The notes: a model not told the origin generated them from the letters alone. Positions 26,101 through 64,000 are shown, counted from the stretch's first letter. The stretch: DNA of 64,000 nt from Ascidiella aspersa (GCA_963924565.1 OZ004609.1:7998001-8062000), one strand, 5' to 3'. Numbers and translations are program-made.

Positions 26101-29100
26101 GTAATTTGTTGCAAATCACCCTATTTAACGCGGAATGCGCCTTGCGAAATAAACTATTGTTATTTTTTACTCGCGCGAATCAGACCTGGAGAAACAACCA
26201 AAATGAAGATCACACCGCTTGCCTAAAAAAAAGCGCTCTAATCGAAAAATTAACATAATGTTTCGATAAATGAACAAAAAACTCTTGGGTGTTTATTTGC
26301 CTAGTCGGTATCGCACCATGTTGGAAAAACGTAGATTATTTTTTGAAAGATAATAATACGGCAATTTTTCAATTGCAAATATATATTTGCACAAAACTTA
26401 TGACGCTGAAATGTCACCACAATTTTAAATGAAAGTAAATGAATACTTCCTAATACAGTTTAATTCATTTTATGAATGCCTTCTTAAAACAAACTTGTTA
26501 ATTCTCGCTGTCTTGAATCAATTCTCGTTTGCACTAGATTTGTTAACATCGGATTCAACAGCAAACGTAATCTGCTTTGCTCTCTTAACATGGATCGCTA
26601 ACATGTACTTGTCATCCGGTTTCCAAGAAGACATGACCTGACCTGAATTTACGTGTTAGATTCGTGCCAGACGGGTATCGGTCCTATACAATGTGTTTTT
26701 TTCGCGGTCGCACCGTAGTCCTCAACGCTATTTTGCATGTCATCAAGCCTAACGACGACGGAAGTATAGGCGCACGGTGGCACCGGACTGGAAGCTGCGA
26801 GCTAAACGACGTCCGTGCGAGGCACAACAGAGTTTTCCGGGCCCAAAACATTGTTCCCGCAGCGTGATTGACAGAGGCAATCCTTGCGAAGATTTCCTAG
26901 CGTTTTGCCAAGTCTCTTGACCATATATGAAGGACAGAAATAACGTTGTAGCCCCTAGGTCCTAAAACGGAGCCTAGCACATCAATACACGAACTCTATA
27001 AGGACGTGAATTGAGGTGATATCGCTTTTGGCGACGGCTTATTCTGGCACAAACAAGTGATTTTTGAAAAATACCTTTGTATCGGAAACCAAATTTTAAA
27101 CAGGTTTTATGGAGAAGGGACCCGTTGACGCTTTTCTATTTTCGATGCCAGGTTGTACTTGCCCGGATAACGCTCAAAGCAAAGGTTTTTCGACGCATCA
27201 CGCCAGGTTTCAAGCATAAACAACATCCTTTTGTTTCTTTATTCATCAATCTGCTTTTGAGTAACACGAAGTATTACCTTGTTCGCAATTTCAATGATTC
27301 AAAACACCGACCCTGTAGACATCAGTCAACATAAAAGAGCGTTTCAATATCTTTTGGGATATTGAGTGTTAATCTTTTTAAGGACATAGACTGTGAAGTG
27401 TTTTTACTTTGATTGAATACTATTTGCTTTTTTAACTGTGTTTTCTTTTAAAAATAGGTTTAACTCACAACTCACAATATACTGACGCCATCCACACAGA
27501 ATGTACCAGATACAGCTATCCACAAACTGTAGAACAAGGGCAAGTTTAAAAAATAGTTTATATGTATCTACGAAGCCCTTAGTAGACTGTTGCATCTCTA
27601 ATGTTACCTTTTTTCTTTATTCGAATGAAACTGTTTAATTGGAAAAACTTTTTGAGGCAATGCTTGTTTTGAAAAGTCAAAACGTTTGATCCAAGTTCTT
27701 AAACACATATTTTTCTGATGGACAAATGAAAACATGTAAATTGATCTGAGGACAGCATTGCATGAGAAGGTAAAAAGCCAATTATCGAAGACAAAAATGT
27801 AGGAATACTCCGATTTATCATGCATCTCTTTATGACATTACCATCAATAGTTGCGCCTATTTTTACGCCTGATTTGATTGTTTATCATTTAGCTTGTCCT
27901 TGTTCTGCTGCCACACAGCAACTTTGAAAAGTATAAAAGAGCCATTTGTTCTATTTTCCTTAAGAATTAAAAACTTCTTGGAGACAACTCATAATTATCT
28001 ACTGTATATAGGTAAAACAGAAACCGAACGCTAATTTAACGAATGCTTAGGTCTAACACACAAAGACACAACCATGATACAATTATTATTAAGCGCTAAT
28101 AATACGCTTTTATATAGTCCCCGCAAAAATCAATATACTATCCTAAACAGGAAATCGTCAACATATGTGATAAGTATGAAGTTTGGGGCAATACACTGGG
28201 TATAGTAGCTATAACATTTGTAGAAATAAACATTTCTTACAAAAAACTCAGTTGTAAGCACACATATATGTGTGTACATATGTTTCATTCTTACAAAAAA
28301 GTAACAAAACCAAAAATGTATTCACGTTTTCTTCTCAATGAGCTTAATGTATCTGAGTGGCGGGAGCGAGCGCACGGAGATGAAAAAGCCGCCGATTGCC
28401 GACCGTTGTGTAATATTAGGCCTACACGACCATCTGAATGCGCAACTTACTGCTTTGAAAAAAATACATTTACGCAGGGTATATTCTTCTGCCTGAGAGA
28501 CACTAAAACAAATTAGGAACTAAAGGAATTGAAAACGGTCAACAGCACATTGCGCGCAGAGCAAAGTGCCCCCACTGGCCAAACTTGTGAAGCGACCTTT
28601 ATTTCTTTGCACCAAACAACGAAAAAAAAACTTTGTAGAAATTGAGTATAGTCAAAGTTGAACTTACACAATCGTTAAAAATACAGTTATTTGTTTTCGA
28701 AATATTATATGCGTTCCAGTATAACAAATTACGACATATATTTACTTATATAAAGCCCTGGTTAAAATTAGTTTATCGAAGGTATATGGAATCTTATTGT
28801 GCAGAGAGGTACTCGTTTAAAAGAAAAGTTTTTTGTAGCATGAGGGCTTATTGAGTACTGAGATCTTGCTGTGTGGCAACGAAAACGTTGCCTACGCAAA
28901 AATGTACACCCACCTCAGACTCGAAATGACGCTTGTCTGCAGACGAATATTTCAACGACGATTAAAAGCAATTGGATTTCTATTTTAAACGTGCTCCTAT
29001 AGCGCGAGCGTTGATTGGATGGATACTACAGTTTTAGATTTCTATAGTTTAGGTTTGCGATTGGTCTTTTTCTGACGCCTACGTGACCTTTTACGTCGAC

Positions 29101-32100
29101 GACCTTTCGGCGTTTTGCGTCACCGACAACATGACCTTTCGTGCGTCGACGTGACATTCGGTAATTGCAAAGTCAACGCATTTTTTATGCGCTTGCGATA
29201 GTTTGAGCGCGAAACAGCCCCGTTACAGGCGTCAACTTTGCGGGTATTCCTAAGCCGGAAGCTATATCAGACTAAGCGTGATAATCCAACACAAATTGAA
29301 CTAGATTTATCGACGACCTAGGCTTTGGCGCGATAGGTGCGAGTTTCACTATAGCCTTATTCAAAATAAGTGGATGTCTCTTGCGGGCCCACGACGTATT
29401 TTGCCCTAAATTTTCATGTGCAAGTTTTTTGACCCCTGACTGGATAATTAATCGTCCAATTTCTCCACGATGATATTGACTGTAACTCCCTTTTAAACTA
29501 TCGAAAGCAAACTTTAGTTTGATTAATTTTATTTAAACGAACATTAAAGAGAACTTTAACACAGGACCGTTCTGATATAATGAATAAGGTTCCGGCCGGA
29601 GTATACTAAAATTCTTTGAAGCACCTTCATTTCTTTAGCTATTTGTTTTCTGGTAAAACGCGCCAGTCTGAACGGCGCATCTTTCTCTTATAAGTGGTCG
29701 CAGGTCAATTGAAGATATTTCATTTAAGGAACCCAATACGGGGAGGTTTTGGCAAATACGGGGAGGTTTTGGCAGAAGGGCAATTTAGATTGACAATACT
29801 GGAATAATTACGAGGCTTATTTACGCAGGCGATAGTATCTTAACGCCACAAAGATTTCTTGACAGACTGGCTTGGGCTGTGTCGCAAACCGTAAACAGGT
29901 TATTCAGGTTCTTACTGTTAATAATATTATTGCAAGTTTGACTGCAGTGTCTATGCTGCCGCTTATCGAATTCCAATCAACGACTACAACCAACAAATGT
30001 CTTATGTTCTGCGCACCCACGCAGTAGTCAGCGGTATGTCATGTAGGCGCGCCTCGCCGCCGTGCTTCTATTTTTCAGAACGAAAATCAAAAAGTGAAAT
30101 CGCCAGCCCAAATAAACAGGATCAAAGCCAATGTTTAACCACGCAAAATTGTTTTTTTAGGAATAACACATATTGCAGTGCGCAGGAGCAGCACTTACCT
30201 TCTTCTTAATTCCATACCTATATTACCTAAAATTAAAAAAAATACGTTTAAATTGAATTCGTTTGAGCGGTAAACCGACCAAAACTCTAAATCAACTGAA
30301 TTCCTAATGTTCTGAGGTTGGCCCACGCATCACTTTATAATATACAGAGTGGGTGCGGCAAAACTTGTTAACGGAATAATGCGATCGGTTGTACCACCAT
30401 GGCTCGGTATTATACATCTTGGTTCATTCGAACTTTTTTCTCAAAGGTTTAAAAATAAAATTAGAACTTTTCAGTTTCCCAAATTAGATTACATAAGTTA
30501 AATTACCGAATTAGCGAACACTAGAAATTAAAGGAAATTCAAAACCCATTTAAATGGAAAACGAAAATTTTTCTGTAAAATTTAAATGGCAAAGATTATC
30601 AGACTGCAACCTTTTTCTTTAAAAACCGAAAAACAAACAAACTAAAAGGACACTAAGAATATCAAAGCCCATACAGAAATAGGTATCATTTTGAACGTTT
30701 CGAATAACTCTTTATTCATTTTCATGATGTTGAAAATGAATAAAGAGTTATTCCAAACGTTCAAAATGATACCTACTTCTGTATGGGCTTTGATATTCTT
30801 ACTACGTCTTACTACAACCTCCAACCATTATGCTCTAAAAGGACACTAAATCAAATAAAAAAATCAACCAGAATCATGTTTAGATATGTGATGCTCAATT
30901 TGTGAAGTATTAGCAGGGTGGAAGTAAAATAATTTTCTGACCAGACCGTGACCCGTTCGCTCGCATGAAATTTTCAGAAATGTCACAAATTGTCCCTATA
31001 ACTGGACTTCTAAACAAAGTAACCTTCGAAAACCTATACGGTTATCTTCTTTAATTCAGGCTTACCTTCACCACTGCGCATTAGGCAAATATAATTGTCT
31101 ATATAGTGAGCGTCTAGAGCAGCGGTTCTCAACCAGTGGGCATGGCTCACTAGTGGGCCATGGGAACATTTTGAGTGGACCATAGACCAAATTTATAAAC
31201 CTAGTTTTAATGAAGAATTAGGTTTTATTTGTGTCACTACACTTAATTTTACAGAAATAATGGCTTGGGAAGGAATTTAGAAGGAATGTAAATTTATCGT
31301 TCACCAGCTAGTATCTCACCAATGCACGGTTAAAGAAATAATCTGTTTTGAAACATGTTGTGCTGTGTTTTGTTCTAAACCTATTTCATAGTTGTTTTTT
31401 TCATTTTTCAACATTTATTGGACCACAGAATTTTTGTGCAACGAAAATGGGCCACGAAAGAAAAAAGGTTGAGAACCACTGGTCTAGAGTTTCTTGGTAT
31501 TCTGCTAAACTTTGGGTATTGTGCCCTTACAGTCATATGTTACGCATTTTCCAGACGAAATAAGCTGCAACTTCGACGAAGGATTTTGTAAGTGGAAGCC
31601 GAACAAGCACTCTGACTTTGACTGGACGCTGAACCGCGGGAAAACCGCTTCACTGAAAACCGGCCCGGAGCATGACCACACATCGGGAGGTTAGTGCACT
31701 CTAGTTTGATAATGCTAAATTTTTTAAGCCCAACATGGACTTTATAATAATTAAAACATCTCTTCTGGTAATTGTAATGGTTAACTTTTTTCCTTTTTGT
31801 GTTTTCCATATATTGTGTATTACGAGCGTTCGGTGCCATTTACCTTGACGAAATCAATTTAAATAGGTTGCCGAAACGTTGGTTAACAATTACAATCACC
31901 AGAAGTACTATTTGTTAGTGTTATTACTATTTCTAGCAAGTTTATATATATTTTCAAAGGTGTAGTGCAAAAGTTTAAGGCTATATATGCTACAGTTTAT
32001 ATGCAGTGTTTACGAGCTAACAAAAGTGTCAGCTTCACCGCTAAATTCGTTCGGTTTAATTTGTGCCACGTAGTAATTTACATACGATCCAATCGTCGGA

Positions 32101-35100
32101 GTATTTGATTGGCATGTTATAGTTTTAGTCTTGAGTTTTCCTGATCCAAGACTTCTATGTGGTCATAATTCGTCAGTAAGCACACCTATTAATCCGATTT
32201 ATTAATGTAATCCCGTTGTTGAAATAAATACCGGGTGTCACGATAGAAATACAACCGATTACAAGTTACCTCAGCAATCGTTAAAATTGCACCCGGTGTT
32301 AAGTAAACAAATACGTAAACTGCTAAGAAACAATATTCCGGTGATAACGTTTCGTGATGTAGGTAGTTTTTTGCAGCTATTTACGGGACACGTTTATTTA
32401 GTCGAATCCCCGTCTTGGACAAATATTACATTGTTGAAAGAAAATTGGTAAAAAAATTGGATTTTACGAAGAGTATTTTCTTTGTAACACAATACACGGG
32501 CTTTCCCAGCCACTTTTAAATATAAAAGTCGCCAAACAACATACTTTCTTCTCTCTTCGAACGTTTTGGTAATATCTCATGTTATTAGCAGTGCAAACAA
32601 AATGAAGATAAAATCATTGAAACGTGATAAACACTGGTTAAAAAGACAAGGCGAAACGTTTTGCCTTGGAAAGGTGGGGCATTTTTTTGTCTATACTGTA
32701 TATGGATTAGGGCTTATGTGTTTTGCGAGGTTAGTCTTTATTGGGAATTTTGCAGAGAACATCATTCCCATTTTTGTTTAATCGAAGCAAAATCTACCCC
32801 AAATCCTGTTTTTGCGACAACAATTTAATACGATAACATCTGATAACTTTTTCACATACGATAACATTAAATTATATTCGAATTTTCCCCATTACATATC
32901 ATAAAAAAAATTGAATATAATGACCAGACTAAAACACAAGAGAACATGAACCCATGAACTTCAGCTGGGAGGCTTACAATTGTATTCGATTTTTCCTAAT
33001 AGCAAACTACCTATTATACCCTAACACAATTATTGTCAACCTCTTATGGACTACGGCGTTGAGTATTTTGCTGAAATGTCACTATAAATGGAACTGGGAC
33101 AACACAATTAAAAAACAATTTGATACATAAATAGTTGTGCCAAAGAAGCTTACCAATTGAGCAAAAATCAGATTCTTAAAAAATCTTAAATACCTATCGA
33201 CACCCTTAAGCATTAAAAATGGCACACCAGGGCGCCGCAGCACCCCGGCTGAGAACCACTGCTCTATCAAACTGTCGATGTGTTCCAGACGGCTATTACA
33301 TGTTCACCGAGGCTTCGTCGCCGCGGTCAGCTGGTCAAATGGCCACCATCTCCAGTCCAGTCGTTTCTTCGCAACTGCGCGTCTGCGTACGATTCCACTT
33401 CCACATGTACGGCGAAACGATGGGCAAGCTCGAAGTGCTCACCACCAAGCCGGGCAGTGACAGGTCGGTGACGTCATGTAGTGACGTATTTCTCATTACG
33501 TCATAGTTGGTCTATATCAGACTAATTATAATTGGCTGAGCAAGACTCTAATTTACAGACAAACAGTTGTACAAATAAATATATCGCCGGTTGCTTGAAT
33601 TTATTTTGTAGCTATTTTATGTATTTAGTACACATTTTGTTTACCTATTAGACAAAACAATATACTTTAATAGAATTAAATACACGAGACATTAAACATC
33701 GATAAGTGTTTCGTCGGTTGAATAACTATAATCATTACTTTGAAAACGTTATTTTTTTAAAACACTTATATTTTAAATAACGAAGCCTTTGACTGGTTTA
33801 TACATTTGTATATATAGCATTAGACTGATTCATACCATTGGAAGGATTTTCTTGAAGGGTCGAATTTGATTTAAAGCTACGCAGTAATTTGAATATTTTG
33901 GCCAGCTGAAATACGCACGCTTCTAACCTACTCCTTTAATAGTTAAAAAAAATTCAAATAATTAAATTTAATTTTGAACCCTCAAATAAAAAAAGTTGTT
34001 TCAACATTTACAAACCACCCCTTTGTGCTTACCTGCATTTTGCTTTATTGTCACAAAAGAAATGAGATTAAGGAGGAACGTTTCGTTAGACGGATAAAAT
34101 ACATAGCCGTTAACCAGGAATGTGTACAATTTTAGGTTTAAATCACACCTTTGAATTAGGTCATTGTTTCCTGATTGGTCAATCGTCGTTACGTCACTTT
34201 GTCCGACCACTGTCACGAAAAGGAAGTTACTTAACTTATTTACCGGGGATGGTCGCCGGGGATTTAAAGCAATTCCGGATTATTCGTTCCTTCTCCGAGA
34301 TTAAGCGCAATGATTATAGTTCTCACGCGTGGTTTTAGCACGTGTTAAAATAACAACATGGAGATCAATTTTCACGAACAATACCGCGGTTGTCGAATAA
34401 CTTTTTACTTTGAAGTTTAAAGAGACACGTTCTTTGTGGGCTACTTACATGTCTTATAGCGATAAAAGCATAGTATACCTAACAATTGCGTTTATGCGAT
34501 TGGTGGTCGTTTAGGATTTTGTATTACATCTGACACTATTAGAAGCTTGTAAGTTAAGCCACCATTTAAACTACCAGATTAGTTGACGTAATACGACAGT
34601 TTTCTTAGATATTTGCATTGAAAACCTTTCTAATGTGTTTTCTTTATCTCAAGTTGTTTTTCACAATATAAACAAGTTCAAGGTTTTAGCTTCAAACTAA
34701 TTAAGCTAAATAAATGGTGGTCCTCAAACTGGGGTCCGCGGTCCTTTTGGGGTCCGCGAGACAATTTTCTGGGTTTCCCGTCCCATTGATACCATTAAAA
34801 AAACGTGTTATTTTGTGTTTATTTGTTTATATTTTCAATGGACCGTGAGCAATTTAAAAAATTTTTGGGGGACCGTTGCGTAATTTTTTTAAAAAAGTTT
34901 GAGAGCCACTGGGCTAAGGCAACTTGCTTAGATATGGTTGGAATTAACTTGATTTCAAGAGACTAAAACGCAAAAAAGTCAACTTAAACACACAAAATAA
35001 AAACAATATTTTTTAACTATCTCGTCCTACGAATCTTTGCTATTTATGATCTTACGAAAATAAATTGTAACTTTGTCTAACCTAATTTTGGTTTGAATTT

Positions 35101-38100
35101 GATTTGATTAAAATTATTCTCGGTAAAATTTTGGTTCTATGGATTGTTTTAACGAAATCGGTTTGTAAGTTTCTAATCCAGTGTGGAAAATTTCGGCTGC
35201 ATTATAGTTTTGCCTCCCTTAGAAATATAAGTGATTAGGTTGACGCAAGGGATAAACTTAAAAAAAAATAGAATTATAAAAACACCCCCGGAACAAATCA
35301 AATCTAATCATTCAGGTTCTTCCACAAATGGTCGGCCGATGGACAAAAAAGTACCAACGAGTACGATTGGAGATTCGCTCAAGTCGACATTTCTGAGTCC
35401 TTCAACTTTCAGATCGTCTTCCGCGCGATTCTGGGCACCAACTTTTACTCGGACATAGCAGTCGATGACGTCATCGTTAGTCCAACGTCATGCCGTGAGT
35501 GACGTAATGAAAATGTTAGCCGTTAATATGGAAAGTATATAATATTGCTGCGCAAATTTAAGAGTTATTACGTTATTAATGTAGATGGTTAGAATATCGT
35601 GATTTCTTTTTATAATTAAATATGCTAGTTTGGACGACCCCATCGTTTAACTAGTGCTTATAGTTAACCTCCATATAGTATATCGTCTTCTATTCGTCAG
35701 CATGGGGTATACAACACGTCATACAATCAACATATATTTTTCATAAGATGTGCATTAATTGTAAGCGTCGGAATAACTAATAACAAGCGTTTAGCCTACG
35801 TGATAACTGGATTTAAATTTATACTGTGATTCAAATCAAAAATATTGAATTTTCATAATGGCTCGCATAGCTAGATGTATATCAAAAATTTAATAACAGT
35901 TACGCCGAACTTACAAAAAAGGTAGCACTGAACATGTGATATCGAAAATCACCTTGTTTATACCTTACAAGATAAATGTCGACCTTAATTCTTGAGCAGT
36001 AACAGCAGACTACTCTACAAAGCTAGGAATTCAGGTCAGACACTATTACAAAATATCATTTTAATAGTGAAAAGATCTTTTAATGTAGATTGTTTAATAG
36101 TATCTGACCTATTGATAGGTTTGCTATATTATTCTACTATTCCCACAAGGGATAAAATCACTTAAAAATGAGAGATGCATATTTGGGAGCAAGAACAGCT
36201 AACAGTAAAGTGGGGAGAAAAATGTCGTTGGCCTTATCCAAAATCGTTATTCGCCATTATCGAAATTAGGTTGGCTTAAAAAGCAAAAACAAAAGTCTTG
36301 CGTTTTCTATTCCAGGTTCTAGCCCTAAACAAGTTCAGTCTGTGAGCAGGCCGCCGCCCACAAGCCGCCAAATCGCACCGACCAGCTTCATGCAAGGTTT
36401 GTCCCACAAAAACAAGAACAAAATTATATTGAACACAACAAGTGAATATCATTAGTGTTATAAAACTATTTATTTAAAAAAATTGCAATCGACTTAGTTT
36501 AGAATTGAAGTAGCAATTGACTGTTGTATTTTTAACCAGTTGTCAATATTTCGTGATCCTGGAATAATACCTGTATTGTAGATTTAATTACTTCGTACGT
36601 TTGGATTCGGCCGTTCAAACAATTTGTTAACAGAAAAATAACTGAATATAATTTGTCTTTTTAAAGTCAAGCAGATTCGCTAAACTTGCCTTGCTATAAC
36701 ATTTTAGGAGCATTTAGAATTGAATTTCATATCTGATTAAAATCGGTGAATCTGCCTGCATTATAGATTTAATTACTTTGTAAGTTTGGTTTCAACAGTA
36801 TATGTCATTTGTAAACAAAAAAAACGACTGAATTAAAATGGCCATTTAAAGGCAAAGAGGTATACTAGCTAAACTTTTAGGAGGTAGCGTAAAGTTCATA
36901 TTTGACTAAAATGTGGGAATGTCCCCGTATTATAAATTTAGTTCCTTCGTATGTTTGGTCAACAGTTTAAACAATTTGCAAACCGAACAACGATTGAATT
37001 TAAATGCTAAACTTGCCTTGCTACACAATTTTAGGAGACAGCCTTCGATGTGATTTCGAGACATCTCATTTGTGCGGCTGGACGCAACCGGTCTACGACC
37101 AATTCGACTGGACCATTTCGAACAAGACACCATCACCAAACACGGGGCCGCTAAAAGATCATAAAGGTGGTGTACTTAAACTGCAGCCTCGTAAAACTAA
37201 AAGACCATAACGGAGGCATACTTGATCCCATCTCATAAAACTAGTTCTTTCAGCACGAAAAAGAGAAGCGGCATGTCTTCGTGGGAACATATAAGAAACA
37301 CTTCAAGTTTTTACCTGTATCTCACCTCTGTTGTTTATACCTCATTCAAACTTTTCGCAAAGCCCACATCGACATATTACCCTAACAACTCTTTTAGTCA
37401 ATCTTGCTAAACATTTTTAGATAAAGAAGGAAAGTTTGCCTTTATCGAAGCCTCTTCAAAAAGTCCCCGGGACAAAGCAAGGCTACAGAGTTCCTTCTTC
37501 ACTCTTCCAAACCCCGCCTGCTTTACCATGTGGTACCACATGTACGGCAACTGTAAGTATTAAGTGTGCATCTAAATGCGTTTAAGTCGACGTCAAGCAT
37601 TAGTGCGAAATAATGCGTCATGGAGATAAAATTAGATGTAAATTCAGCTTTAGTACTCAGGCTCTCCAGGAGCTTATGTCCACACAAGACATATATTGTG
37701 TGTTTGTTTGATTTTGACCACAAGTAGTATACACAATGTGAATTAGTAATTGGTATATCAAGTAGTGCTACCGAACAAACGTGTTCCGCAATCCACTGCA
37801 TTGTACTTCTCCGAATCTTTCTTGGGAATCATTGTATTGTATACCCGTGTTTTAGACCCCTTTAATGTGAAGTTGCCTGTACTAACAGAATGAGCAAGCA
37901 TTTGGCGTCTCGACTCGCTCCTCTCTGAGCCTTTGTAACTCAGTTGATAGAGGGGTGGTCCCGGTATGACCGAGGTCGTGAGATCGAACCTCACTGCAGG
38001 CTAGTTGTTTTTCTAGCCTGCTCTGCTTGCATCATTGATCGACAGATTTAGTGATTCGGCAAAGGCCTTCGTTATACTAATGATACGTAAGTGCGTAATC

Positions 38101-41100
38101 GTTTGCCTAAAGGCAGCTTCATAAGGGCTAGATCACAGTTGTTAACACACATATGTGTGTGTGCATTTTTCTTTCATTTTTTTGTGCATCTTTCTTTTCA
38201 CTTTTAGTGTTTGTTTTTAATTTGAAAAACTTAACCAAGCTTAAACACGTTTTTTTAGCCACTGGCTCGTTGTCCATCTACAGCGTCACCCAAGGGAATT
38301 CTACGAGCGAAGTTATGGATCGCCGTCAACTGACCAATGAGTTGCTATGGCAACGATCCGGTAACCATGGCGACAAGTGGAACAAACTTTTCCTCAATTT
38401 AAAGGTTCGGTAATTTTCTCCGCCCATCAACAAATCAACATTTAATTATTCTTAAACCTTAATATTGCATATATATTCATTTTAAATTAAACTTAATCGA
38501 CATTTTTCTTGACACCATAGTCTTTACCCAGCTTGCTTCAAACTATTAATTTTGTTTACTATTTACTTCGCTTCGTCCGTCGATAAATAAGCAATTAATC
38601 AATTTTCAACATTATTTGTCATTGCATATATATCCATTTTTAAAATCTTAATCAACATTTTTTTTCTTTACATCCTAATCGAGTATGATCCTAGCTATTT
38701 ACTTTCTTTAGATGCTATTAAAATGATAAATCCAAGGTAGAACTTCTTAAAACGACACAATTTTTTGATTAAATTTTAATTTTGTTTTTCATATTTTTGC
38801 ATGATTTTTAATTTAATGGCACTGATCAGTTGTTAGTCCATTCAAGAAATTCTGTGCGACTAAATCTTTTAAGAAGTGTACATTAACGCCAAATTCGAAG
38901 AACCTATTTGTTTACCGCAAATCTCACTTTAAACTGTTTATTTTTCACAGGAGTCGTCGGGTATGCGGCTTGCCATAGAGGGTGAACGGGGTCTTGGGTG
39001 GAAGGGTGACATCGCAATCGACGACATTGAAGTCTTACCGAATGAATGCCGTAAGTCGTTTGAGCTCTTTTCCATAGTATAGGTGGTGACTTTTTAGCAG
39101 TATTGTACAACCGCCCGATACAGTTAATTTAAAGTATTCAAATAGATAATATATTTTTGTTCTGAGGATAGTATCACATGGCAATCGTTGAAAAGCATAA
39201 TACCTTGCAACACTATTTTAAACGTTAAATAAAAGTTAATACCCCGTTTCAAATATGAATCTAAATAAAACTTTTAGTTTTTTGCTAATCGTTTGCATAA
39301 ATGACTTATGTCCAAGTCAAATCAACTCTTCAAAATAATTCAAAACAAGTCAACATTGCAAGCATCTTAATTATTAGCTTACATCAAGTAGCCTTCCTAT
39401 AATTTAACATTTGTTTTCAGTAATACACTACTTTAAAACAGAAATTAATTTTTATATTTTTGTTAATGCAAGCATCTTCCTACAATTTTTTTATCTATCT
39501 CGGCACTCTGTTGCCCATAAAACCCAAAAATGCTTGATCCTTCAAAGATGCGTAACGTAATATAAAACCCCAGAGGGAAGATTGGCTAAGCTCTATCTGG
39601 TTTCATATGCGCATTTATTAAAAAAAAAGGTTAAAAAGACCACCGGTGAAGTATAATACAGGGTGGCATAGGCTGCAAACCAGGTGGTAAATATGGAGCA
39701 GAGATAATCATTTATGTTTGCGCTCAGTGAGAGCTTTCACATTTCTCGCCTTATCAAGTTCCCGGGCAATTATTAACCCGCATCCGAAGGCAATCGGTTT
39801 TTGAGTGTCCCGCCTTCCAAAAGCCTCTTATTGGTTCGTTGTAGAGGTTTACAGAAATAAATGCGGGACCCGAAGCGGTTGTGGCCGCCGCGAAACAATA
39901 ACAACGCCACCTCGAAAACGGAAAATCCCTTCCGCCTTTAAAACAATGCGGCCTTGTGTGCTGCCTCGAAATATGCCTCATCTAGATTTAAATGAATGGT
40001 TCCTGTCGCCGTCTGATGTTTGAATGACACGAAAGTAGGTTAAAAAGTGGATGCCAAAGCCGTGTAATCTTGACTGAAATCGGCTTACATTTAAACCAGT
40101 TTGTCAATACGACCACAGGATTTTTCATTCTTTTGTTTTCTGCTCAGACAAGCATTTAATATCGGTATAATATTGTTGTACGATGGTTGGAGATTCATAA
40201 GATTTATTATGCAGTAAATATTACCTATCTATAGAGTATGGGGACCTTTTTAGCTTCAAAATGAATCGTACGCCTTTAAATATTGAAAATAAGGTTAAAG
40301 CAAATTGACATTATAATACTGCAAAAGTACTAACACGTTTTTGCCACTTTGTTGCTTCCTAAAACTTCGTTTCTTTCATTGCAGCCATTTTCAATTGCAC
40401 GTTCGACACAAATTTGTGCGGTTGGAGGCAAAACAAAAAACAGGACGACTTCGATTGGACGAGGACCAACAACGTCACGCCCTCCGCCAACACAGGGCCG
40501 AGATTCGATCACACGAGACGAGGTGTGTGACTTCATAATCCTCAATTATGGATGCTTACATCGTTATAGGAGACTACTTCTGTAATATCACATTCTTCCC
40601 TAAAAAACCTATGTACTTAGTTATGGATCCATGAATTGAAAAATGTGTCTAAGGCCATAGGACAACAATGTGGTGTATTGTTCATGAAAACATATAAGCC
40701 ATTGACAACACGTTTAAGCTTCTATTACCCCTCTTGCGCCGCAATAAACTAGTAAAACTTTATTCGAACTAAGGAACTGTAAATGCTACTTGGTTGAATT
40801 ACATATTCCCTTTAACCAAAATCTGATTATGTACTTTTCTTATATTTTTGCACAGGTTTACTTGATGATGGCGTCATATGCGTTTTGAACCCAAATAAAA
40901 ATCGGCTACTGTTTTCTTTCAGGATTGCTGGGACACGGACACTACCTGTTTGTCGAATCATCTAAACCTCGAGAAAAGGGAGACAGGGCCAAGCTAACTA
41001 GTCCGCTCGTGAAACCGGGAAATAACCCAAGTAAGTGATTAAAAAAAGTCTCAGTGTGCAATTTCTTGAAACTGGCACATTTTAAAATGAGGGGCCTAAT

Positions 41101-44100
41101 TAGCGTTTATCGTTAGAATAAAAAAGTTTTCGGTAAAACTGTCTTTTATTGTTTAAACTGGTTTTGCTAACCTCTTTCTGTTAACCGGTTTTTGTGCGCC
41201 TGTACCTTTATGCTATACCCGGTCAATTTGGCGTTAAACCTGGCAATTCACAATCATACTTTTCTCACGACTAATATAACCTGCCTGATTTTTATCCAGA
41301 CAAGTGCCTGAGCTTCTGGTACCACAGCCATGGAAGCAACATCGGCCAGTTGAACGTTTACAAGCGCGAAAGGGGAAACACCAACCCCTTCCTGGACACG
41401 GTTGAGTGGTTCCACGAGCGTGACGAAGGTGACCGCTGGCTCTTTGCCAAGGTCGACATCGACGATGTAAACCCATACCAGGTTAGGACATCTTCTTAGC
41501 TTGGAATTGATTTTCCGATAATATCGGATAGAAGCCGATAACAGGTGTCAAGTTACACCCTACTTAGATACCTATTTATTGTCCGATAATATCGTATCGA
41601 ATACGATAACAGGTGTCAAGTTATACCCTACATAGATTTGTAATTATTGTCCGTTAATATCGTATCAAAGTCGATACCTGATGTCAATTTATCAGCGTTG
41701 TAAATAGGTCATGTTAAAATGACTTAAGCCCCAGTCAAGTCATTTGTAGGATAACTTAAGTCCAAGTTAAGCCTTTTCGAATAAATAACAAGTCAAGTAC
41801 GAGTCCAAGTCATCAGTTGCGCAAGTCAAATTACGAAGAATAACTGAACTAAAAAATTGAGTTGTTTTTTGTGCAAAAATTTGGACAAATAGCTCAAATT
41901 TATAAAAAGAAAATACTTAAAGAAATGCTTTATTTAAACCAAAGTCATTTGTTCAAAAGACTTAAGTCAAGTCAAGTCATTTGAAACCAGTGACTTAAGT
42001 GCACTTAAGTCAAGTCATTGACTTAAGTCATTACAACACTGCAATGTATAGCCTACTTAGGTTGGAATAATCCAGCCAGAGACAATGAGCCATTTTTTTG
42101 CCACAACTTGCACATGACAGAAATCAATGCTTGCCTGTTTCTTCCTCACAATCAAACATGTCTATGTTCACCTAGATTGCTTTTAAATGTTGCACGCTAA
42201 AAACGTTGCGTTGCGAATTTTGATTGTACTACAGGACTCTTTAGTAAATGCCATCATGCAAGTTTCTAAAATGTGTTGACTTATTTCAACAAAAGTTATA
42301 GAAGCCTACTTAGATTGGTATGCATTCAGAACCTTTCACACACAAAGCATCCGAAAAGTCTACACCTAAACCACAACACGAACCCTTGTATATATATTTT
42401 CATAAACATTATAATACTTTGGTTATATTGCTGCTGAACGTATGGAAAATGTTTATTTTTCTTAGATTTCTATGAAAGACATCAGAAAATCTTATTAAAT
42501 AGATCAACCATTTTATATGTTTAAGCAATGTGACTTTTTTAGGCACATTTGTTTGCACTTACCGTTTGCTGTTTGTTGAATCTCAGATCGATTATTGCTC
42601 GCCATTCTCACAACGACGGTTGCCCCCTTTTTTTCTTTTTTTTGCCCCTTTTTTGCAGATTATTTTTAGGGGGGTAAAATCTACAAATTTGAGTTTAACT
42701 ACAAGTTTGAGTTTTTTACTCGATATCTTGATTCTTGAAACTTGGGTTTGCTGTTGTACGACAGAGCGTGATATAGTCAGGAGCTTTTAAAAGGCCTTTG
42801 GAGAAGAAGCGCCATTTTAGCACAAAATTTTAGATGTTAAAGCAATGTGACTTGTTTAACCCCATTTGTTTGAACTTTTTGGTACACTATACACGGATCT
42901 GTAATGTAGCTTGATACTGAATTGGTAATCCAAAAAGGTCGAGTAGATCGACATCATCTTGATTACGACGTTTCACCTTAACTAAAGATGATACAAGCTG
43001 GTTTGGAAACGTCTTAATCAATATGATATTGATCTACTCGACGTTTATGGCTTAGCTATTCATTATCAAGTTATTATTTGCTGTTTGTTAATTCTCAGAA
43101 TCGATTATATTGCTCGCCAACTCACAACAACGTCGTTTTTGCAGATCATTAATAGAACGTAATAGCGAAAAGACGGCGAAAACAACACACAACAAACGAT
43201 AAAATATTATTTGCAACACTTTTATCTGCTAATTCTCAGGATCGATTATATTGTTTGCTTCAACTGCACTTTTTCGCAGATCATTTTCGAAGGGGTACGC
43301 GGCGAAGGCTTCAGCGGCGATATTGCAATCGATGACGTCACAATCGCTGACGGGATGTGCGACAAGTGTTGCGGCGTTGACGTGTTCCAGTGCGGGAACG
43401 GATATTGCGTCCCGGCGTCGCAAAGATGCAACAACGTACAAGACTGCGGGGACGGAAGTGACGAGTCGGAATGTGGAGGTTTGCATTTCATTATTTATGT
43501 TGCAATACTATTTTATTTTTTGATAATAAATTGCAAAGGCAAAAAGGTAGATTAGATCGACAGCATCTTGATCAAGACGTTTCGATACGAACTTGTATCC
43601 TCTTCAGTTAATGTGACTGAGAATCAAATCAAAGAATCCCTTATAAATGGTGGAACACAATTGTTATTATCTGAGTTTGTATAGTTGAATCATAATTTAG
43701 AACCTTGTCGACGTTCAATTCAGGGCTGCAGTCTTGAATAGACAGAGACTTGAGTAACCGCAATCTAAACACGTCTGAAGCCCCTCCGGTTTGCAAAAAT
43801 CAATCTTATGGTCCGAGTGCTGCAGAAGATGTCTGCAAACCTCTGATTTTTCATCCACTCTATGTTCTTTGACCCTCGTTGAAAGATTTCGTCGGGTTTG
43901 ACCAAGGAAGCACCACATGAACACGTTAATTTATACAAGACACTAGATCGCGACAAATGTTCTTGGCGATCCTTCTTTCAAAACGATTTCGTCATTTTGG
44001 TTGTGTCATGGATCAATCGAAGCACAACCTTGCCACTAGTAGAGCGGAGTACAAACCTGCGTATTTCACGACTTATATGGTGTGAACCTTGGCCTATGTA

Positions 44101-47100
44101 TGGTAGTCGCATCAATATATAACGTAATTCTTTTTCTTTGCATTGTACTAAAGGTGCTTTTCCATCTCGGTGTTTATTATTAAAGAAATGCTCGATGCAT
44201 CTGTCGAGAAATTCCAACGGATATCCGTTACGTAGTAACATTAGTTTGATCTTGCTAATGTCCACATGGATGACTTTATAGGAGTAGGAGGCGATACTTT
44301 AAGCGTAATGGATAACTATAACATTTATAGTGGTGTAACAGGGCTTCCAAATGTATTGTTTTTTATGTGTGTAATGTACACTTGCTGTTCGTATTGTCAA
44401 CGTGCCGCTTTAAACGCGCTACCATGAATCTAAACAGTTACACAAATATTGGACGCAGGTTGCGGGAAGCCGGTGATTCTTCCGCGAACAAGTTCGTCGT
44501 TTGGTGGCTCTACTGAGCTCGGATCCCTGCAAATCTCGGTTTCTCCAGTGAGCGCCCGAAGATCGAACAACCAGGTGCGATAATGAGCGGGTTAACTGGT
44601 TATTGCTGACGATAAAGTTAGCAGGAAACTTTGAGTACTCGTCAGTACGACCTGGTTGACAATAATTAGTATATCATTAAAATCTTAACAAGTCTTAGTT
44701 ATTGGCACTGATCGGGGAACGTCATTACCAAATTTTTACAGTGTGAACTTAACTCCGATTTTTTGCCGAAAAAGAATCCGAACAAATACTACAATATAGG
44801 CCAACACAGCGTTAAGTCTAAAAACGAAATAAATATGTTTTATTTTAAGAAATAAAAATAATATATTTTTGCGGTTTAATCTATACTTAAAAATTGTGGA
44901 CGAAATAGCCATCTTTAATTCCATCATTCGAAAAATTGACTGAGCTTTACAATAACATTGATTTTCAATCGGTGTTAGTTTAATTTTCACTGACGTAAGG
45001 ACCCTTGCAAGGTAAAAGTCGATCTTAATTCCTGATCAGTAACAGCAAAATACTCTAGCAAAGCTAGTAATTCAGGTCAGACACAATTAACAGATCGTAA
45101 AAGATGTACATATATTTCGTTTAAAAAGGCATCGTAACACGTCAGTATATGTTAATTCGAATGAATCTCAACTTAAAATCTCAAGTTGGCCTCTCTGCCA
45201 ATAGTCACTAACTACTCGTGGTACATCAGTCAAATTAAAAAATTCTTACATCGGTCAAAAAAAACAAAAAACACGGGTTATAAATGACTGTTATTGTAAA
45301 GCTAATCACTTTTCACAAAACAAAAGGCTAGCTTTCAGCATTACAGAAGTCAAGATAAATCCCCCCAAATATATTTCGTTCATCTAAGTTGGACTCTTTG
45401 CCTATAGTTGTTAACCTTGAAAGCTTTTTTCTGCAGAGTCGCACAAACTACTCGGCGATTGCGAGTCCGCGTCGCGTCGCCCAACTTCCTTCCCAGCAAG
45501 TGAAACGAATCCGACTCCCGAACCTCCGTTGGTCCAAACTCCCACAGCTGAGCACAGGTATCCGGACCGAGATCAGGATGATACCGAACCGGGGACTTGG
45601 TCATCCGGCTGAGATCGTGCCGAGCCGAAGGAGGAGGGGTCTTCCGTGGGAGGAGCGCAGAGAGGGACATTGGGGAAGAGAAGAAGAGCAACGGAAGAGC
45701 CACGAGGTTGGGGAAGATGAGGAGAATGAGCAAGAGGAGAGGCAGGAGCGCAAAGAGGAACACAGTGATCGCGAAGAAGAGCAAAGGAAGAGCGAGGAAG
45801 ATGTAGAAGATCAAGAAGATGAGAAAGAGGAAAGAGAGGATCGGGAAGATAATGAAGATGACAAAGATAATCCAAGAGAAGATGAGGATGTTGAAGAAGA
45901 AGAAGAAGAAGACGAACAACCTAGCAACCGTCGCCATTCCAGACCCCGCGGCTTCACCAGCATTCTTTGGCGTTTCATCCGACCGGTCCGCAAGTCGGTG
46001 AGGAAGGTTCCCATCGTTATCACCACCAGGAAGCCCATCGTCAACATCCGGATGTTCGGCCGTAGACCGCGTCCAACTCCTCCGCGGATGTCACGACGGC
46101 CGGAGCCGATCCCGACCTGGCAGTGGAGGCTGATCCGAAGCTCGCTGAACCGCGACAGGACCGCAACCAGGTCAAACATAGAAACCTAAAGTCTTGTTGA
46201 AATCTTCAAAGCACGAATTATTTAAGAACAGTTGTTTCCAAATTTTCTCGGGACACCCGAGCCAAATTAGAATATTGTAAACATCTCGCGACACACACGA
46301 CACAGACCACTAAGTTTTGTTGAAACTCCAAAGCACGAGTTGTTCTAGAACTGTGGTTCCCCAACTTTTTAGTGTTAAACAAATCACAGTACTGTGAACA
46401 TCTCGCAACACACAGAAAACGAGGTCGTAAGTTTGAACCTCATTACAGGCTAGTTTCACGATTAGGATGCATAAGGCAACGGTGAAATGGTATGTTTAAG
46501 GTCATGCGTTTAATAGGAAGAAAATCGGGTTAATGAATTGTATCAGTGTATGAATTGATAACAATGTTATAATAACTTAGTTTTTATTAAATTTAGTCCA
46601 TCATATACAGTCTGTTTAAATTACCATACTGCCAATTAATCAGCTATTTGTCTAATTTGCCAGAAATTGCTCGTTGTAGAGTTTAAGGCCCTTTAATGTA
46701 AATGAATTTCGTAAAACGGACGAAAAAAAATAACGTGACGACCTATACATTGCGAACTGCTGTTCTAGAACATGTAAAGCATAACATATTGTTAGGCACT
46801 GATCGATTAGTGAATAAATTTGGAGTGATTGCTGACAGATTAATATCTAAAGTTGCTATTTAAATATTAGAGCATCAAGGTATGGTTGGACATTGAAATC
46901 CACATTATAACAACACCATCATAAGAATGGACCTCTAAATCATCCTAAAACATTTTGTTTTTAAAGTATCGTTTTGACGCCTTTGTTATCACTTTATTTC
47001 TGATACCCACGGGTTAAATACAAACAACCATCAGAGGTAGATGATTTCAACTAGTAACTTCGAAAATTATATTTCAGGGGGAACCTGCTATACAGGATCA

Positions 47101-50100
47101 AGCGTTCGGCCTTGAAAAAGATAAGCGGTGGTAATAAAGCAAAAGCACACAGTTGGCCATGGCAGGTAATTTTGTTAACATTTAATGGTTGTTATTAATC
47201 TTTGCTCGTAGTAGTATTCATTTTGTTTAAAACTTGTGATTTGAGGAAACTGTTGAAAGACAAATTGGAAAGGCTTTTAAAAGGACATTTTTACATTAGG
47301 TAATAATAAAACCACTTTACAAGGCAAAAATGAAAAGATTTCCCAAACAGCATTTTCAAATATCTTTACTTCTAGGCGCACTGTTTGCAAATTTTATTAA
47401 CTCGATTGAGCCTTGCACTTTTAGCGTGACCGTTGAATCTCGATTTCCCAGTGTTGTAAACAAATCATTTCAAAAAGAAGTAAGTTCCAGTCAAGCTAAT
47501 TGCAAAACAACTTAAGTCAAAGCAAATTCGTTTGCAAAAACTAGTCAAGTTCTATTCCAAATCCAGAAGTAAAGTCCTTTTTAAAGCAAGTCAACGTCAG
47601 GTCAAGTTGTTGACACTAAAGTAAAACGATAAGCTATTAAAATTGGTAGCCTTTTTCAATAATGAACATTACCTCAATCGAAAATCACTTAAGTCAATTC
47701 ATTGATTTGAATCATTACAACACATCCATTTTCAGTCGCTAAACCCACAGGGACTAAATATTACAACCCAGACCCTGCAAGTCTCTCAACCATTTTGCGA
47801 TTTTCGTGTAGGTCGCCTACTACGTATCTGACACCAACACTAAAACCATTTACTTTTGCGGAGGAACGCTTATCCATCGCTACTGGATTCTTACAGCCGC
47901 GCATTGCCCGACATTGTAAGTGAGCCTTTGTTTTGAGTCGACCCATTTTGTGTTTTTTTTTTTCGGCATATAAATGTAATTTATAAATTTACTTAACTTC
48001 ATTATTGCAGGATCTCAACAATAGGAATATTCGTATATTATGACGCTATAATGGGTATACCAACATTTAAGTGTAGCCTACATAACTAGTGGCCTGTTTT
48101 ATGTAAACGACTGTAAGAGTAAACCGAAAAAACTTCTGCTTGCATGTCGTGCCGAATCATTATACAGCCTAATTATTTCTATACTTTAAATAAAAGTTGA
48201 TCTGTTCTGAGCAATCTACATAAGCGTGAAACATTTTGAACTTAGTTCGTTAGTTTTAACCTAGTTAAAAAATGGCGCTGGTATACAATCCTACCGCAAT
48301 GCACATCATTTGGGTTAGGGGTGCGAGTTAGTGTTTGAGTTGGGTTAAAGTTTAAGTAATATTGGTAAATAAAAATACTTGTCCTACACTCACACAAACA
48401 TTAACAGACACCCTAACCCAAATAATGTGCGTTTGTTTCAACACTGTGCTAGGATTGGCGCCAAAAGTTTTAACCTAGTAAATTAGTTTTACTCTAGTAA
48501 ATTAGTTTTAACCTAGTAAAATGCCCTTAAATTTACTTATATTCAATTTGCATTGCAGAGGCGATGATCACTCGGTGGTGGTCGGAGCTCATGACATTTA
48601 TGACGTGGATGGCAATGCACAGGAGGTCAAGGTCGACGTGGTTTACATCAATAAGGTTTACCAGTTCTCCGAAGATTTGGTCGGCGACATTGCTCTTGTC
48701 AAGCTCCGGTGAGAACTTGTGCAGTCAATCATGACCTCATATTGCTGTTTTTTTTACGGTAGTGCCCGGGGATTTTGTGACTATAAATGACTGTCGTAAT
48801 AATTTATTTAAATAAAGGAGAATTTTTGGTTTAATCCAGCCTGAATGCAAGGTTATATTTAAAGGGATCTTTCTCTATGTATTTCAAGAATATCATACTT
48901 ATTTTCAAACGATTGTGAGCTTCTCGTGTCTGTTGTTGGTATTTTCTGTTGTGTTCCAACAAGTTAAGTTGAACAACTTTTAATAGCATTGTAAAAACAA
49001 GATTTCATTTTTTTTAATTGAAACAGAACATCTTGACAAATACGTTTTTCCAAATTTTCTACTCATCATAGCAATACTTATCACAATTCAATCGGTCGGT
49101 GGTGTAGAATCCCATAAAAGTGATCACTGGGTTTCTAAATTGTAGATCATACGTCTTTAGGAATACATTGAATTGTAACGCAACGATGTTACTAACCTCG
49201 AGTTATTCACAAGTGCAGTTCGCTTTCTCACAGTTGAGTTTGCGATGAAGGACGTTATTACAATTAAACGAACTCGGGTTGTCCGATACGTGAATTTTAT
49301 TCTGATTCCGATACCCGCTTATTTGAAAAAAATTAACGCAATCCAATCCGGTACCAGAATGAATCAGGTCAAACAAGCAAAATTGATCAAATTGAAACTT
49401 TCAAATGTTATTTTTTCCAAATTGTTTGGCCCCCCCCAAAAGTTTACATTAGCGTTAATACGTTAAGTTATTCCATATTGTCAACTTACTTTGTTTAGAT
49501 ATAATATACGTTTATAGAATAGCAGCGTTAGTTTGCAAATCATGAGTGAAAATCGTATATTTGGGCACCAATATCAATCAAGTATCGGACAAGTACCGAA
49601 ACTTCTACTGATCGAGTATCGCTAAACCAGGGTTTTTTTAACTGGGGTCCATGAACCCCTTGGGGCTCCTTGGACTAGTTTTAGGGGTTCTATGAATCCC
49701 TAATTTAACTATTAGTGTATGCTTGAAAAGTAATCATTTTTTAAAAGAAAAAGTGTAGTTAAAAATAAAACCTTTTCGCACTGATTGAATATTTAGACTC
49801 TATTTCACTTTTAAATATTTTGGGCTGATAATAGCAGATTCCTAAAAATTATTTCTATTCTGACGTCAATTTATGACGTCTTCGTATACATTTTCTTTCC
49901 CACCGTGGTCCACGCAAAGCAAAAAATTATAGAGGTACGCGGTAAAAAAATTTTAAGAACCCCTGCTCTAAACGGAGATATCGTGACGTCACGTTTGTTT
50001 CCAGATACCCTGTGGTGACGACGAATGCGGTCCAGCCGGCGTGCTTGCTCAACATGGATGACGAGCGGTTCGGGCCAGGTCACGTGTGTGCCACAACTGG

Positions 50101-63973: not shown

Positions 63974-64000
63974 ATTCCTCTATAACTATATATATTTTAA

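What the first reader, a model, noticed from the sequence alone, without database searches (positions are those of the whole stretch)
44459..47165. Protease zymogen with an approximately 296-residue, charge-balanced basic/acidic/basic activation segment studded with convertase sites
Seen in the sequence: after the LDLa repeat comes CGKPVILP, which looks like the Cys that bonds to Cys122 of the catalytic domain (PAC, exon 27). The activation site KK|ISGG lies about 296 aa later, whereas in typical S1A zymogens such as chymotrypsinogen this spacing is roughly 10-20 aa. By hand count the insert is a triblock: a basic block (net about +16) ending in RRRR (45626-45637); an acidic block (51 D/E in about 97 aa, net about -35, with a duplicated REEEQRKS unit); and an Arg/Pro/Trp-rich block (net about +21) between RRHSRPR and RIKR. 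The charges nearly cancel. Inference: furin/PC-type cleavage would excise the insert as separate polyanionic and polycationic peptides while the MAM-LDLa chain stays disulfide-linked to the protease. This would be a protease/polyprotein hybrid in which the insert drives granule condensation or matrix coacervation, or keeps the cationic peptides masked until activation.
Basis: partly seen in the sequence, partly recalled or inferred. Interest (0 to 1): 0.85.

Follow-up and report, generated by a model that had tools for sequence, protein, structure and literature searches.

The report
Sea-squirt protease with long charged linker
A sea-squirt gene for a secreted multi-domain serine protease appears to carry a species-specific, roughly 245-residue disordered basic/acidic/basic exon just before the enzyme's activation cut, but no transcript or relative confirms this, and very long linkers at this position are already known in vertebrate clotting proteases.

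Summary
The sequence facts hold. A GC-rich 734-nt open exon (B, 45437-46170) lies between the exon with the inter-chain Cys (CGKPVILP) and the exon with the activation site (KK|ISGG). The splice phases fit. The Cys-to-Ile distance is 297 residues. The charge blocks are +16, -35 and +27.

Exon B is single-copy and has exon-like composition. It is the best candidate to restore the reading frame, because the two flanking exons cannot join in frame through their strong splice sites. The nearest paralogues encode the same stretch in one exon with 18-19 residues, so the insert is specific to this gene.

Weak points:
- Exon B has a weak donor (gtcaaa).
- A route without B exists through a weak acceptor.
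- No homologue of the insert exists among 1.84 billion representative proteins.

Convertase-type motifs are no more frequent than the Arg-rich composition predicts; only RRRR and RIKR are canonical.

Long activation-peptide linkers, some with convertase sites, are already described: 245 and 388 residues in sloth and armadillo protein C (PMC9669250).

The polyprotein, coacervate and masking ideas are untested. I rate this a new variant of a known kind, of modest interest. The scan also noted the cationic tail on this same window (s1-793446).

The parts
11166..11247 (+). Probable first coding exon: Met followed by a hydrophobic signal-peptide-like segment. The donor GAG|gtaaaa (1 trailing nt) fits the acceptor at 12421 (2 leading nt).
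   Evidence: sequence and phases; inferred, no transcript
12421..43366 (+). Run of MAM-domain exons. MAM N-terminal exons lie near 12480, 31566, 37049 and 40396. Further MAM-type exons lie at 15254, 16140, 19412, 22655, 23597, 24374, 33210, 35308, 37411, 38933, 40889 and 41275.
   Evidence: Pfam PF00629 hits; open frames
43280..43478 (+). Exon with the end of the last MAM domain and one LDL-receptor class A module. It leaves 1 nt, which is completed by the GT that opens exon A.
   Evidence: Pfam PF00057 E=4e-10 and PF00629; boundaries
44459..44574 (+). Exon A: the inter-chain Cys motif (CGKPVILP) and the start of basic block 1. The donor is CAG|gtgcga, phase 0.
44575..45436 (+). Intron A|B, GC about 0.33. 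It holds a multi-copy element of about 170 bp at 45000-45171.
45437..46170 (+). Exon B, the insert: 244 codons plus 2 nt, GC 0.56, single copy, no homologue. The acceptor is good (ttttttctgcag|AG) and the donor is weak (CAG|gtcaaa). An alternative in-frame acceptor lies at 45497.
45437..45637 (+). Basic block 1 within exon B, ending in RRRR (45626-45637). GC3 is 0.63.
45638..45928 (+). Acidic block: 97 aa with 51 D/E. It includes the in-frame 93-nt tandem duplication at 45648-45740 and 45741-45833 and GAA/GAT-type micro-repeats. AlphaFold2 predicts one long helix here.
45929..46170 (+). Basic block 2, rich in Arg, Pro and Trp, beginning with RRHSRPR. GC3 is 0.75.
46171..47077 (+). Intron B|C. 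It holds a local duplication of about 120 bp (46201-46297 and 46323-46414) and a multi-copy unit of about 78 bp at 46420-46497. That unit contains the rival 41-nt mini-exon 46449-46489.
47078..47165 (+). Exon C: the end of the linker, with RIKR and the activation site KK|ISGG (cut between 47120 and 47121), then the protease N-terminus up to WPWQ.
47812..47915 (+). Protease exon with the catalytic His57 motif (TAAHC) and the Cys42-Cys58 pair.
48559..48708 (+). Protease exon with the catalytic Asp102 (DIALVKL).
   Evidence: Pfam PF00089
50005..50123 (+). Protease exon with Cys122 (QPAC), the expected partner of the linker Cys.
   Evidence: Pfam PF00089
50994..51133 (+). Protease exon ending in ANTCL. 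S1-pocket residue 189 is Asn, not Asp.
   Evidence: Pfam PF00089
52119..52292 (+). Last exon: GDSGGP with Ser195, an extra Cys near the C-terminus, and the stop codon.
   Evidence: Pfam PF00089 E=3e-14; PDB hits to plasma kallikrein, chymotrypsin and plasminogen at about 1e-13

Best explanation
The locus is one gene for a secreted mosaic S1A serine protease: signal peptide, several MAM domains, one LDLa module, a linker and a trypsin-fold domain.

The activation-peptide linker is the stretch between the Cys that bonds to Cys122 and the new N-terminus Ile16. In this gene it has been enlarged from the ancestral 18-19 residues or so to 297 residues. The enlargement came from a lineage-specific coding exon (B) and was then expanded by an in-frame 31-codon duplication and GAA/GAT slippage.

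The insert is an intrinsically disordered, charge-segregated polyampholyte, with basic, acidic and basic blocks.

The most likely mechanism, which is inferred and not shown, has four steps:
1. The linker acts as a long flexible activation peptide.
2. A Lys/Arg-specific activator cuts at KK|ISGG. The enzyme itself has Asn at S1 position 189, so self-activation is unlikely.
3. Furin-type enzymes may also cut at RRRR and RIKR.
4. The intervening piece is then released while the MAM-LDLa chain stays disulfide-bonded to the protease, as in factor X and protein C.

Electrostatic pairing of the acidic block with the basic blocks would keep the linker compact and could slow access to the activation site.
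For: Reading frame:
- Exon A ends in phase 0, and the strong acceptor of exon C needs 2 preceding nt. Only an exon of length 3n+2 fits.
- Of 308 candidates in the interval, nearly all the best-scoring ones lie in the exon B open frame.

Coding signal of exon B:
- B is a 276-codon open frame, P about 0.0025 in block-wise dinucleotide shuffles.
- Its GC is 0.56 and the GC3 of the two basic blocks is 0.63 and 0.75. Known exons of the gene give 0.54 and 0.65; introns have GC 0.33.
- Synonymous-codon scores in frame are 0.35 and 0.46, against a mean of 0.32 for known exons.
- B is single copy, whereas both flanking introns hold interspersed repeats.
- The internal duplication is 93 nt, so it preserves the frame.

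Gene context:
- There is no Met or signal-peptide exon between B and C, so the protease is not a separate secreted gene.
- The rest of the gene is intact, with His57, Asp102, Ser195 and Cys122.
- Paralogues have the Cys and the activation site in one exon, 18-19 residues apart.

Disorder and charge pattern:
- AlphaFold2 gives a mean pLDDT of 55. Only one helix is predicted, in the acidic part.
- The fraction of charged residues is 0.40, the net charge per residue is +0.03, and kappa is 0.30 against 0.15 in shuffles.

Precedent: long, convertase-processed activation-peptide linkers exist in vertebrate clotting zymogens (PMC9669250).
Against:
- The donor of B (gtcaaa) is the weakest in the gene.
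- An in-frame route without B exists from 44574 or 44547 to a weak acceptor at 47103.
- A 41-nt mini-exon also restores the frame.
- The insert has no homologue in the protein collections searched and no Pfam family. Selection on it therefore cannot be shown.
- The whole-codon log-likelihood does not separate the reading frame from other frames in the basic blocks.
- Convertase motifs are not enriched.
- The Cys pairing is assigned by homology only. The protein has an extra C-terminal Cys and extra Cys residues before the LDLa module.
Confidence: 0.55

Rival explanations
1. Exon B is an alternative (cassette) or mis-modelled exon. The main protease mRNA would join exon A to the activation exon another way, either through the phase-0 acceptor at 47103 or through a small exon. 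That gives an ordinary linker of 35-60 residues, with B included rarely or never.
For: - The donor of B is weak, CAG|gtcaaa.
- An in-frame route from A to 47103 exists.
- The 41-nt exon 46449-46489 scores as well as B on generic splice matrices.
- The insert has no homologue.
- The paralogues manage with 18-19 residues.
Against: - The acceptor at 47103 (aag|C, no pyrimidine tract) is poor, while 47078 is a textbook acceptor that requires an exon of length 3n+2.
- The mini-exon sits inside a multi-copy repeat.
- The long open frame and the exon-like GC and GC3 of B would be left unexplained.
Confidence: 0.22
2. The activation exon of this gene was broken by an insertion and the gene is decaying or non-functional. 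On this view the open frame of B is a by-product of GA-rich, T-poor composition.
For: - Relative to the paralogues, a single exon has been split by about 2.6 kb of extra DNA.
- T is only 16% of the stretch, and shuffles reach 244 or more codons in 2% of trials.
- The Asp codon choice in the acidic block (GAT 79%) differs from the rest of the gene (GAC 71%).
Against: - All other exons examined are open, with correct phases, an intact triad and the conserved cysteines.
- The full 276-codon frame has P about 0.0025.
- The two basic blocks, which are not GA-rich, have GC3 of 0.63 and 0.75, as coding sequence does.
Confidence: 0.1
3. The locus is two transcription units. A MAM-LDLa protein would end in B by reading through the donor to the stop at 46187-46189. 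The alternative is that B is a nested, independent gene for a small highly charged protein, and the protease is made separately.
For: - The B frame runs on only 5 codons past the donor to a stop.
- The basic/acidic/basic layout resembles nuclear and nucleolar proteins. The only Pfam hits are weak compositional ones to Nop14 and CDC45.
Against: - Exon C has no Met. No Met or signal-peptide exon exists in 46190-47077.
- Cys122 of the protease needs a partner from an upstream chain.
- No poly(A) signal lies within about 600 nt after the stop.
- B itself has no in-frame ATG until codon 48 of the exon, and no homologue.
Confidence: 0.08

Closest known systems
Activation-peptide (AP) linkers of vertebrate vitamin-K-dependent zymogens: factor X, factor IX and protein C, including the 245- and 388-residue linkers of sloth and armadillo protein C (PMC9669250)
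   Same: - The position is the same: between the Cys that bridges to the protease domain and the cleavage at residue 15/16.
- Basic convertase-type sites lie inside the linker.
- The piece between the cuts would be released while the two chains stay disulfide-linked.
- Lineage-specific lengthening occurred by internal repetition.
   Different: - The non-catalytic domains differ: MAM and LDLa instead of Gla and EGF.
- The composition differs: a basic/acidic/basic triblock instead of glycosylated or XQ-repeat sequence.
- The insert sits on its own exon.
- Cleavage and release are not shown here.
LDLa-containing mosaic S1A proteases whose last module is followed by a short Cys...R/K|IVGG linker (enteropeptidase, matriptase/TMPRSS, corin, complement factor I; recalled from general knowledge), and the two nearest paralogues in this genome (L016, L017)
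   Same: - The LDLa module lies directly upstream.
- The CG-type Cys motif is present.
- P1 is basic, the new N-terminus has the I-x-G-G form, and WPWQ lies at the exon end.
- Cys122 is present.
   Different: These proteases have linkers of about 10-20 residues encoded in one exon. This gene has 297 residues over three exons. S1 residue 189 is Asn here, not Asp.
Anionic pro-pieces that neutralise cationic cargo (defensin and eosinophil major basic protein precursors; recalled from general knowledge)
   Same: An acidic block lies next to strongly cationic, Arg/Pro-rich sequence, and the total charge nearly cancels.
   Different: Those are small dedicated precursors. Here the segment lies inside a protease zymogen. 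No cationic peptide product, repeat of a peptide unit or conservation is shown.

Membership tests
S1A (chymotrypsin-fold) serine protease, Pfam PF00089 | Sequence match to the trypsin domain across the catalytic exons | tested here: met
   PF00089 hits on four exons, best E=3e-14. PDB hits to plasma kallikrein, chymotrypsin and plasminogen at about 1e-13.
S1A (chymotrypsin-fold) serine protease, Pfam PF00089 | Catalytic triad His57, Asp102, Ser195 in their motifs | tested here: met
   TAAHC lies in 47812-47915, DIALVKL in 48559-48708 and GDSGGP in 52119-52292.
S1A (chymotrypsin-fold) serine protease, Pfam PF00089 | Zymogen activation site: basic P1 followed by an I-x-G-G N-terminus | tested here: met
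   KK|ISGG lies at 47115-47132. It aligns to K|IVGG of the nearest paralogue. Cleavage itself was not tested.
Two-chain zymogens with an excised activation-peptide linker (factor X / protein C type) | A Cys N-terminal of the linker that bridges to Cys122 of the protease | tested here: inconclusive
   The CGKP-type Cys is shared with a paralogue and Cys122 (QPAC) is present. The pairing is inferred only, and extra cysteines exist at the C-terminus and before the LDLa module.
Two-chain zymogens with an excised activation-peptide linker (factor X / protein C type) | Proprotein-convertase site (R-X-K/R-R) inside the linker, used in vivo | tested here: inconclusive
   Two motifs, RRRR and RIKR, are present but not above composition-matched chance. 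Their use cannot be tested with these tools.
Two-chain zymogens with an excised activation-peptide linker (factor X / protein C type) | The linker is part of the mature mRNA and precursor protein | not tested
Support comes only from frame logic and composition.
MAM / LDLa mosaic extracellular protein | MAM (PF00629) and LDL-receptor class A (PF00057) modules upstream in the same reading direction, with a signal peptide | tested here: met
   PF00629 on exons at 12372, 31509, 37004, 40363 and 43211, and PF00057 at E=4e-10. The signal-like first exon was read by eye.
Polyprotein or prohormone-type precursor | Repeated or conserved peptide units bounded by basic processing sites that are enriched over chance | tested here: not met
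   The only repeat is in the acidic block. The cationic blocks have no repeat. Basic-site counts are not above shuffles. There is no conservation.
Intrinsically disordered, charge-segregated polyampholyte | High fraction of charged residues, near-zero net charge, charge patterning above random, no confident fold | tested here: met
   The fraction of charged residues is 0.40, the net charge per residue is +0.03, and kappa is 0.30 against 0.153 +/- 0.026 in shuffles. AlphaFold2 mean pLDDT is 55 with one helix only. There is no Pfam family.

The most novel reading that the evidence does not exclude
The insert is a functional cargo rather than a spacer. On activation, convertase-type and activator cuts would release an Arg/Pro/Trp-rich cationic peptide (antimicrobial or matrix-binding) that the adjacent polyanionic block had kept neutral. 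One gene would then deliver both a protease and charge-masked peptides, a protease/pro-peptide hybrid not described for S1A zymogens.
Probability: 0.06. Interest if true: 0.7.

Novelty: new variant of a known kind. Interest (0 to 1): 0.3.

Why it matters
If exon B is truly in the mRNA, this would be one of the longest activation-peptide linkers known in a chymotrypsin-fold zymogen. It would also be the first with a clean basic/acidic/basic charge layout.

It would serve as a natural test case for two questions. The first is how a disordered, self-neutralising segment affects access to an activation site. The second is how new coding exons arise inside an old exon in fast-evolving tunicate genomes.

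It does not open a long-standing question. Huge lineage-specific expansions of this same linker are already documented without a known function, and disordered charged inserts are common in animal proteins.

Tried and rejected
I did not resend it or parts of it, so read laying could not be used.

Homologues of the insert:
- The word-index protein search found none.
- A full HMMER scan of 1.84 billion representatives gave only two low-complexity acidic matches, to a WAP/antistasin protein and a zinc-ribbon protein.
- The own genome gave only the insert itself.
- The ESM Atlas gave no usable hit.

Orthologues of the whole gene could not be sought. Exons were searched apart by reference, and each is too short for the length window of the protein search. 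In-script joins were used only to count residues and charges.

Paralogues with the same exon type:
- The best MAM-end plus LDLa match (C1:34.84 Mb) is a protein of alternating MAM and LDLa modules with no protease nearby.
- It gave no comparison for the linker.

Codon tests:
- The whole-codon likelihood did not separate the frames in the GC-rich basic blocks.
- Only synonymous-codon scores, GC3 and open-frame length were informative.

Introner idea. I tested whether both new introns are whole transposon insertions. They only contain small interspersed repeats and are not bounded by them.

I redid it with coordinates only.

Literature searches for an ascidian MAM protease gave nothing specific.


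Full report
WHAT IS THERE

The window comes from a sea-squirt assembly (G000, 308.6 Mb, contig C3). Earlier notes of the scan call it an ascidian. I did not test this.

A multi-exon gene runs along the + strand from about 11.2 kb to 52.3 kb:
- A probable first exon (11166-11247) starts with Met and a hydrophobic signal-like segment. Its phase fits the next exon at 12421.
- Several MAM domains follow, each spread over about four exons (Pfam PF00629).
- One exon (43280-43478) ends the last MAM domain and encodes an LDL-receptor class A module (PF00057, E=4e-10).
- The 3' end is a complete chymotrypsin-fold protease in six exons (47078-52292; PF00089). It has TAAHC, DIALVKL, GDSGGP, the usual internal cysteine pairs and Cys122 (QPAC).
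- By sequence the nearest solved structures are plasma kallikrein, chymotrypsin and plasminogen.
- S1-pocket residue 189 is Asn (ANTCLGDSGGP), so the enzyme is unlikely to have trypsin-like specificity.

THE OBSERVATION

- Exon A (44459-44574) opens with GT, which completes a Gly codon from the LDLa exon. It then reads CGKPVILP and ends in phase 0.
- Exon B (45437-46170) has a good acceptor, 244 codons plus two bases, and the donor CAG|gtcaaa.
- Exon C (47078-47165) supplies the third base of an Arg codon. It then reads through RIKR and KK|ISGG to WPWQ, the usual exon end in this family.

From the Cys to the Ile is 297 residues. The hand counts are right:
- Block 1 is +16 over 105 residues, ending in RRRR.
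- Block 2 is -35 over 97 residues, with 51 D/E.
- Block 3 is +27 over 95 residues.
- The overall net charge is +8.

The repeated REEEQRKS unit is part of a 93-nt tandem duplication (45648-45740 and 45741-45833, 75% identity). This is 31 codons, so the frame is kept.

Charge segregation is well beyond chance. Kappa is 0.30 against 0.153 +/- 0.026, and no shuffle of 500 exceeded 0.243.

One part of the title does not hold as a non-random feature. The linker has two canonical R-X-[KR]-R motifs, ten RxxR and eighteen dibasic pairs. Shuffles within each block give similar numbers (P from 0.08 to 1.0). The sites follow from the Arg content.

IS EXON B REALLY CODING, AND IN THIS mRNA?

Evidence for:
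- Exon A cannot be joined in frame to the strong acceptor of exon C. An exon of length 3n+2 is required. Of 308 possible exons in the interval, the best-scoring ones are almost all variants within the B open frame.
- The open frame spans 276 codons. Block-wise dinucleotide shuffles reach that length in 0.25% of trials.
- Composition is exon-like. GC is 0.56 against 0.54 for 983 training codons of the same gene and 0.33 for introns. The two basic blocks have GC3 of 0.63 and 0.75 against 0.65, and in-frame synonymous-codon scores in the range of known exons.
- B is single copy in the genome, while both flanking introns contain interspersed repeats.
- There is no Met or signal exon between B and C, so the protease cannot be a separate secreted gene.

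Evidence against:
- There are no RNA data.
- The donor of B is the weakest in the gene.
- An in-frame route without B exists through a poor acceptor at 47103.
- A 41-nt mini-exon (46449-46489) also restores the frame, although it lies inside a multi-copy repeat.
- The whole-codon likelihood does not separate frames in the GC-rich blocks.

I put the odds that B is a regular coding exon of the protease mRNA at roughly 55-65%.

COMPARISON INSIDE AND OUTSIDE THE GENOME

Inside the genome:
- The two nearest protease paralogues are 54-56% identical in the last exon.
- Both encode the Cys and the activation site in one exon with 18-19 residues between them. One reads CGKP...K|IVGG, much like the ends of exons A and C.
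- The split into three exons and the insert are therefore derived and specific to this gene.

Outside the genome:
- The insert has no detectable relative. The word-indexed search found nothing.
- Only two compositional hits to the acidic part appeared among 1.84 billion representatives.
- There is no Pfam family and no Atlas neighbour.
- Orthologues of the whole gene could not be sought. Each exon is too short for the length window of the protein search.

HOW IT MOST LIKELY WORKS

Shown:
- The gene encodes a secreted mosaic zymogen with an intact active site.
- It has a basic P1 activation site.
- If B is spliced in, it has a very long, disordered, charge-segregated linker. AlphaFold2 gives a mean pLDDT of 55 with a single long helix in the E/R/K-rich acidic part.

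Inferred:
- The linker Cys bonds to Cys122, as in relatives.
- Activation at KK|I needs another, Lys/Arg-specific protease, because residue 189 is Asn.
- Furin-type cuts at RRRR and RIKR are possible.
- The pieces between cuts would leave, while the MAM-LDLa chain stays attached.
- Pairing of the acidic block with the basic blocks would compact the linker and might gate the activation site.

This is the logic of the activation-peptide linker of factor X and protein C. There, a convertase cuts inside the linker and the peptide is released on activation. Lineage-specific repeat expansions there have produced linkers of 245 and 388 residues in sloth and armadillo protein C, with no known function (PMC9669250).

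The sequence allows them, but nothing I could test supports them. The polyprotein criteria I could test were not met: there are no repeated cationic units, no site enrichment and no conservation.

VERDICT

- The best reading is a species-specific expansion of a known element, the activation-peptide linker, with an unusual triblock charge pattern.
- I class it as a new variant of a known kind, conditional on transcript confirmation.
- Interest is modest (0.3).
- The same window's cationic tail was also noted by the scan (s1-793446). That note is not independent evidence.

Noticed in passing
window 50994-51133 and 52119-52292: The protease has Asn at S1-pocket position 189 (ANTCLGDSGGP) with Gly216 and Gly226, so its specificity is probably not trypsin-like although its own activation site has Lys at P1. 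It also has an extra Cys four residues from the C-terminus that the nearest paralogue lacks.
   Followed up: partly
window 45000-45171 (intron A|B): An interspersed element of about 170 bp has more than 1000 first-look candidates in the genome at 82-89% identity. At other loci it often has an inverted partial copy next to it, so it looks MITE- or SINE-like.
   Followed up: partly
window 46201-46497 (intron B|C): There is a local duplication of about 120 bp (46201-46297 and 46323-46414, 76-83% identity). It is followed by a unit of about 78 bp (46420-46497) that occurs elsewhere both dispersed and in tandem arrays, for example at C3:36.92-36.94 Mb.
   Followed up: partly
window 43715-44265, minus strand (intron between the LDLa exon and exon A): Two adjacent open frames of 69 and 95 aa have no Pfam match. 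From memory, one has a motif reminiscent of GIY-YIG nucleases of Penelope-like retroelements. This is probably a transposon remnant.
   Followed up: partly
window 1163-3094, minus strand: A single 644-codon open frame encodes a glycerol-3-phosphate acyltransferase-type protein (PF01553 and PF19277, E=1e-43).
   Followed up: partly
window 62318-63979, minus strand: A 554-codon open frame encodes a major-facilitator / sugar-transporter-type protein that looks like an SLC22 transporter (PF07690, PF00083).
   Followed up: partly
L015 (G000:C1:34843000-34852999): A paralogous gene has alternating MAM and LDLa modules (MALRD1-like layout) and no protease within the 10 kb read. Its MAM-end plus LDLa exon is 46% identical to exon 43280-43478.
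   Followed up: partly
L017:3703-4047 (G000:C6:5941800-5942150): A tandem array of a 31-bp unit lies in an intron of a CUB-trypsin paralogue, directly after its activation exon.
   Followed up: no
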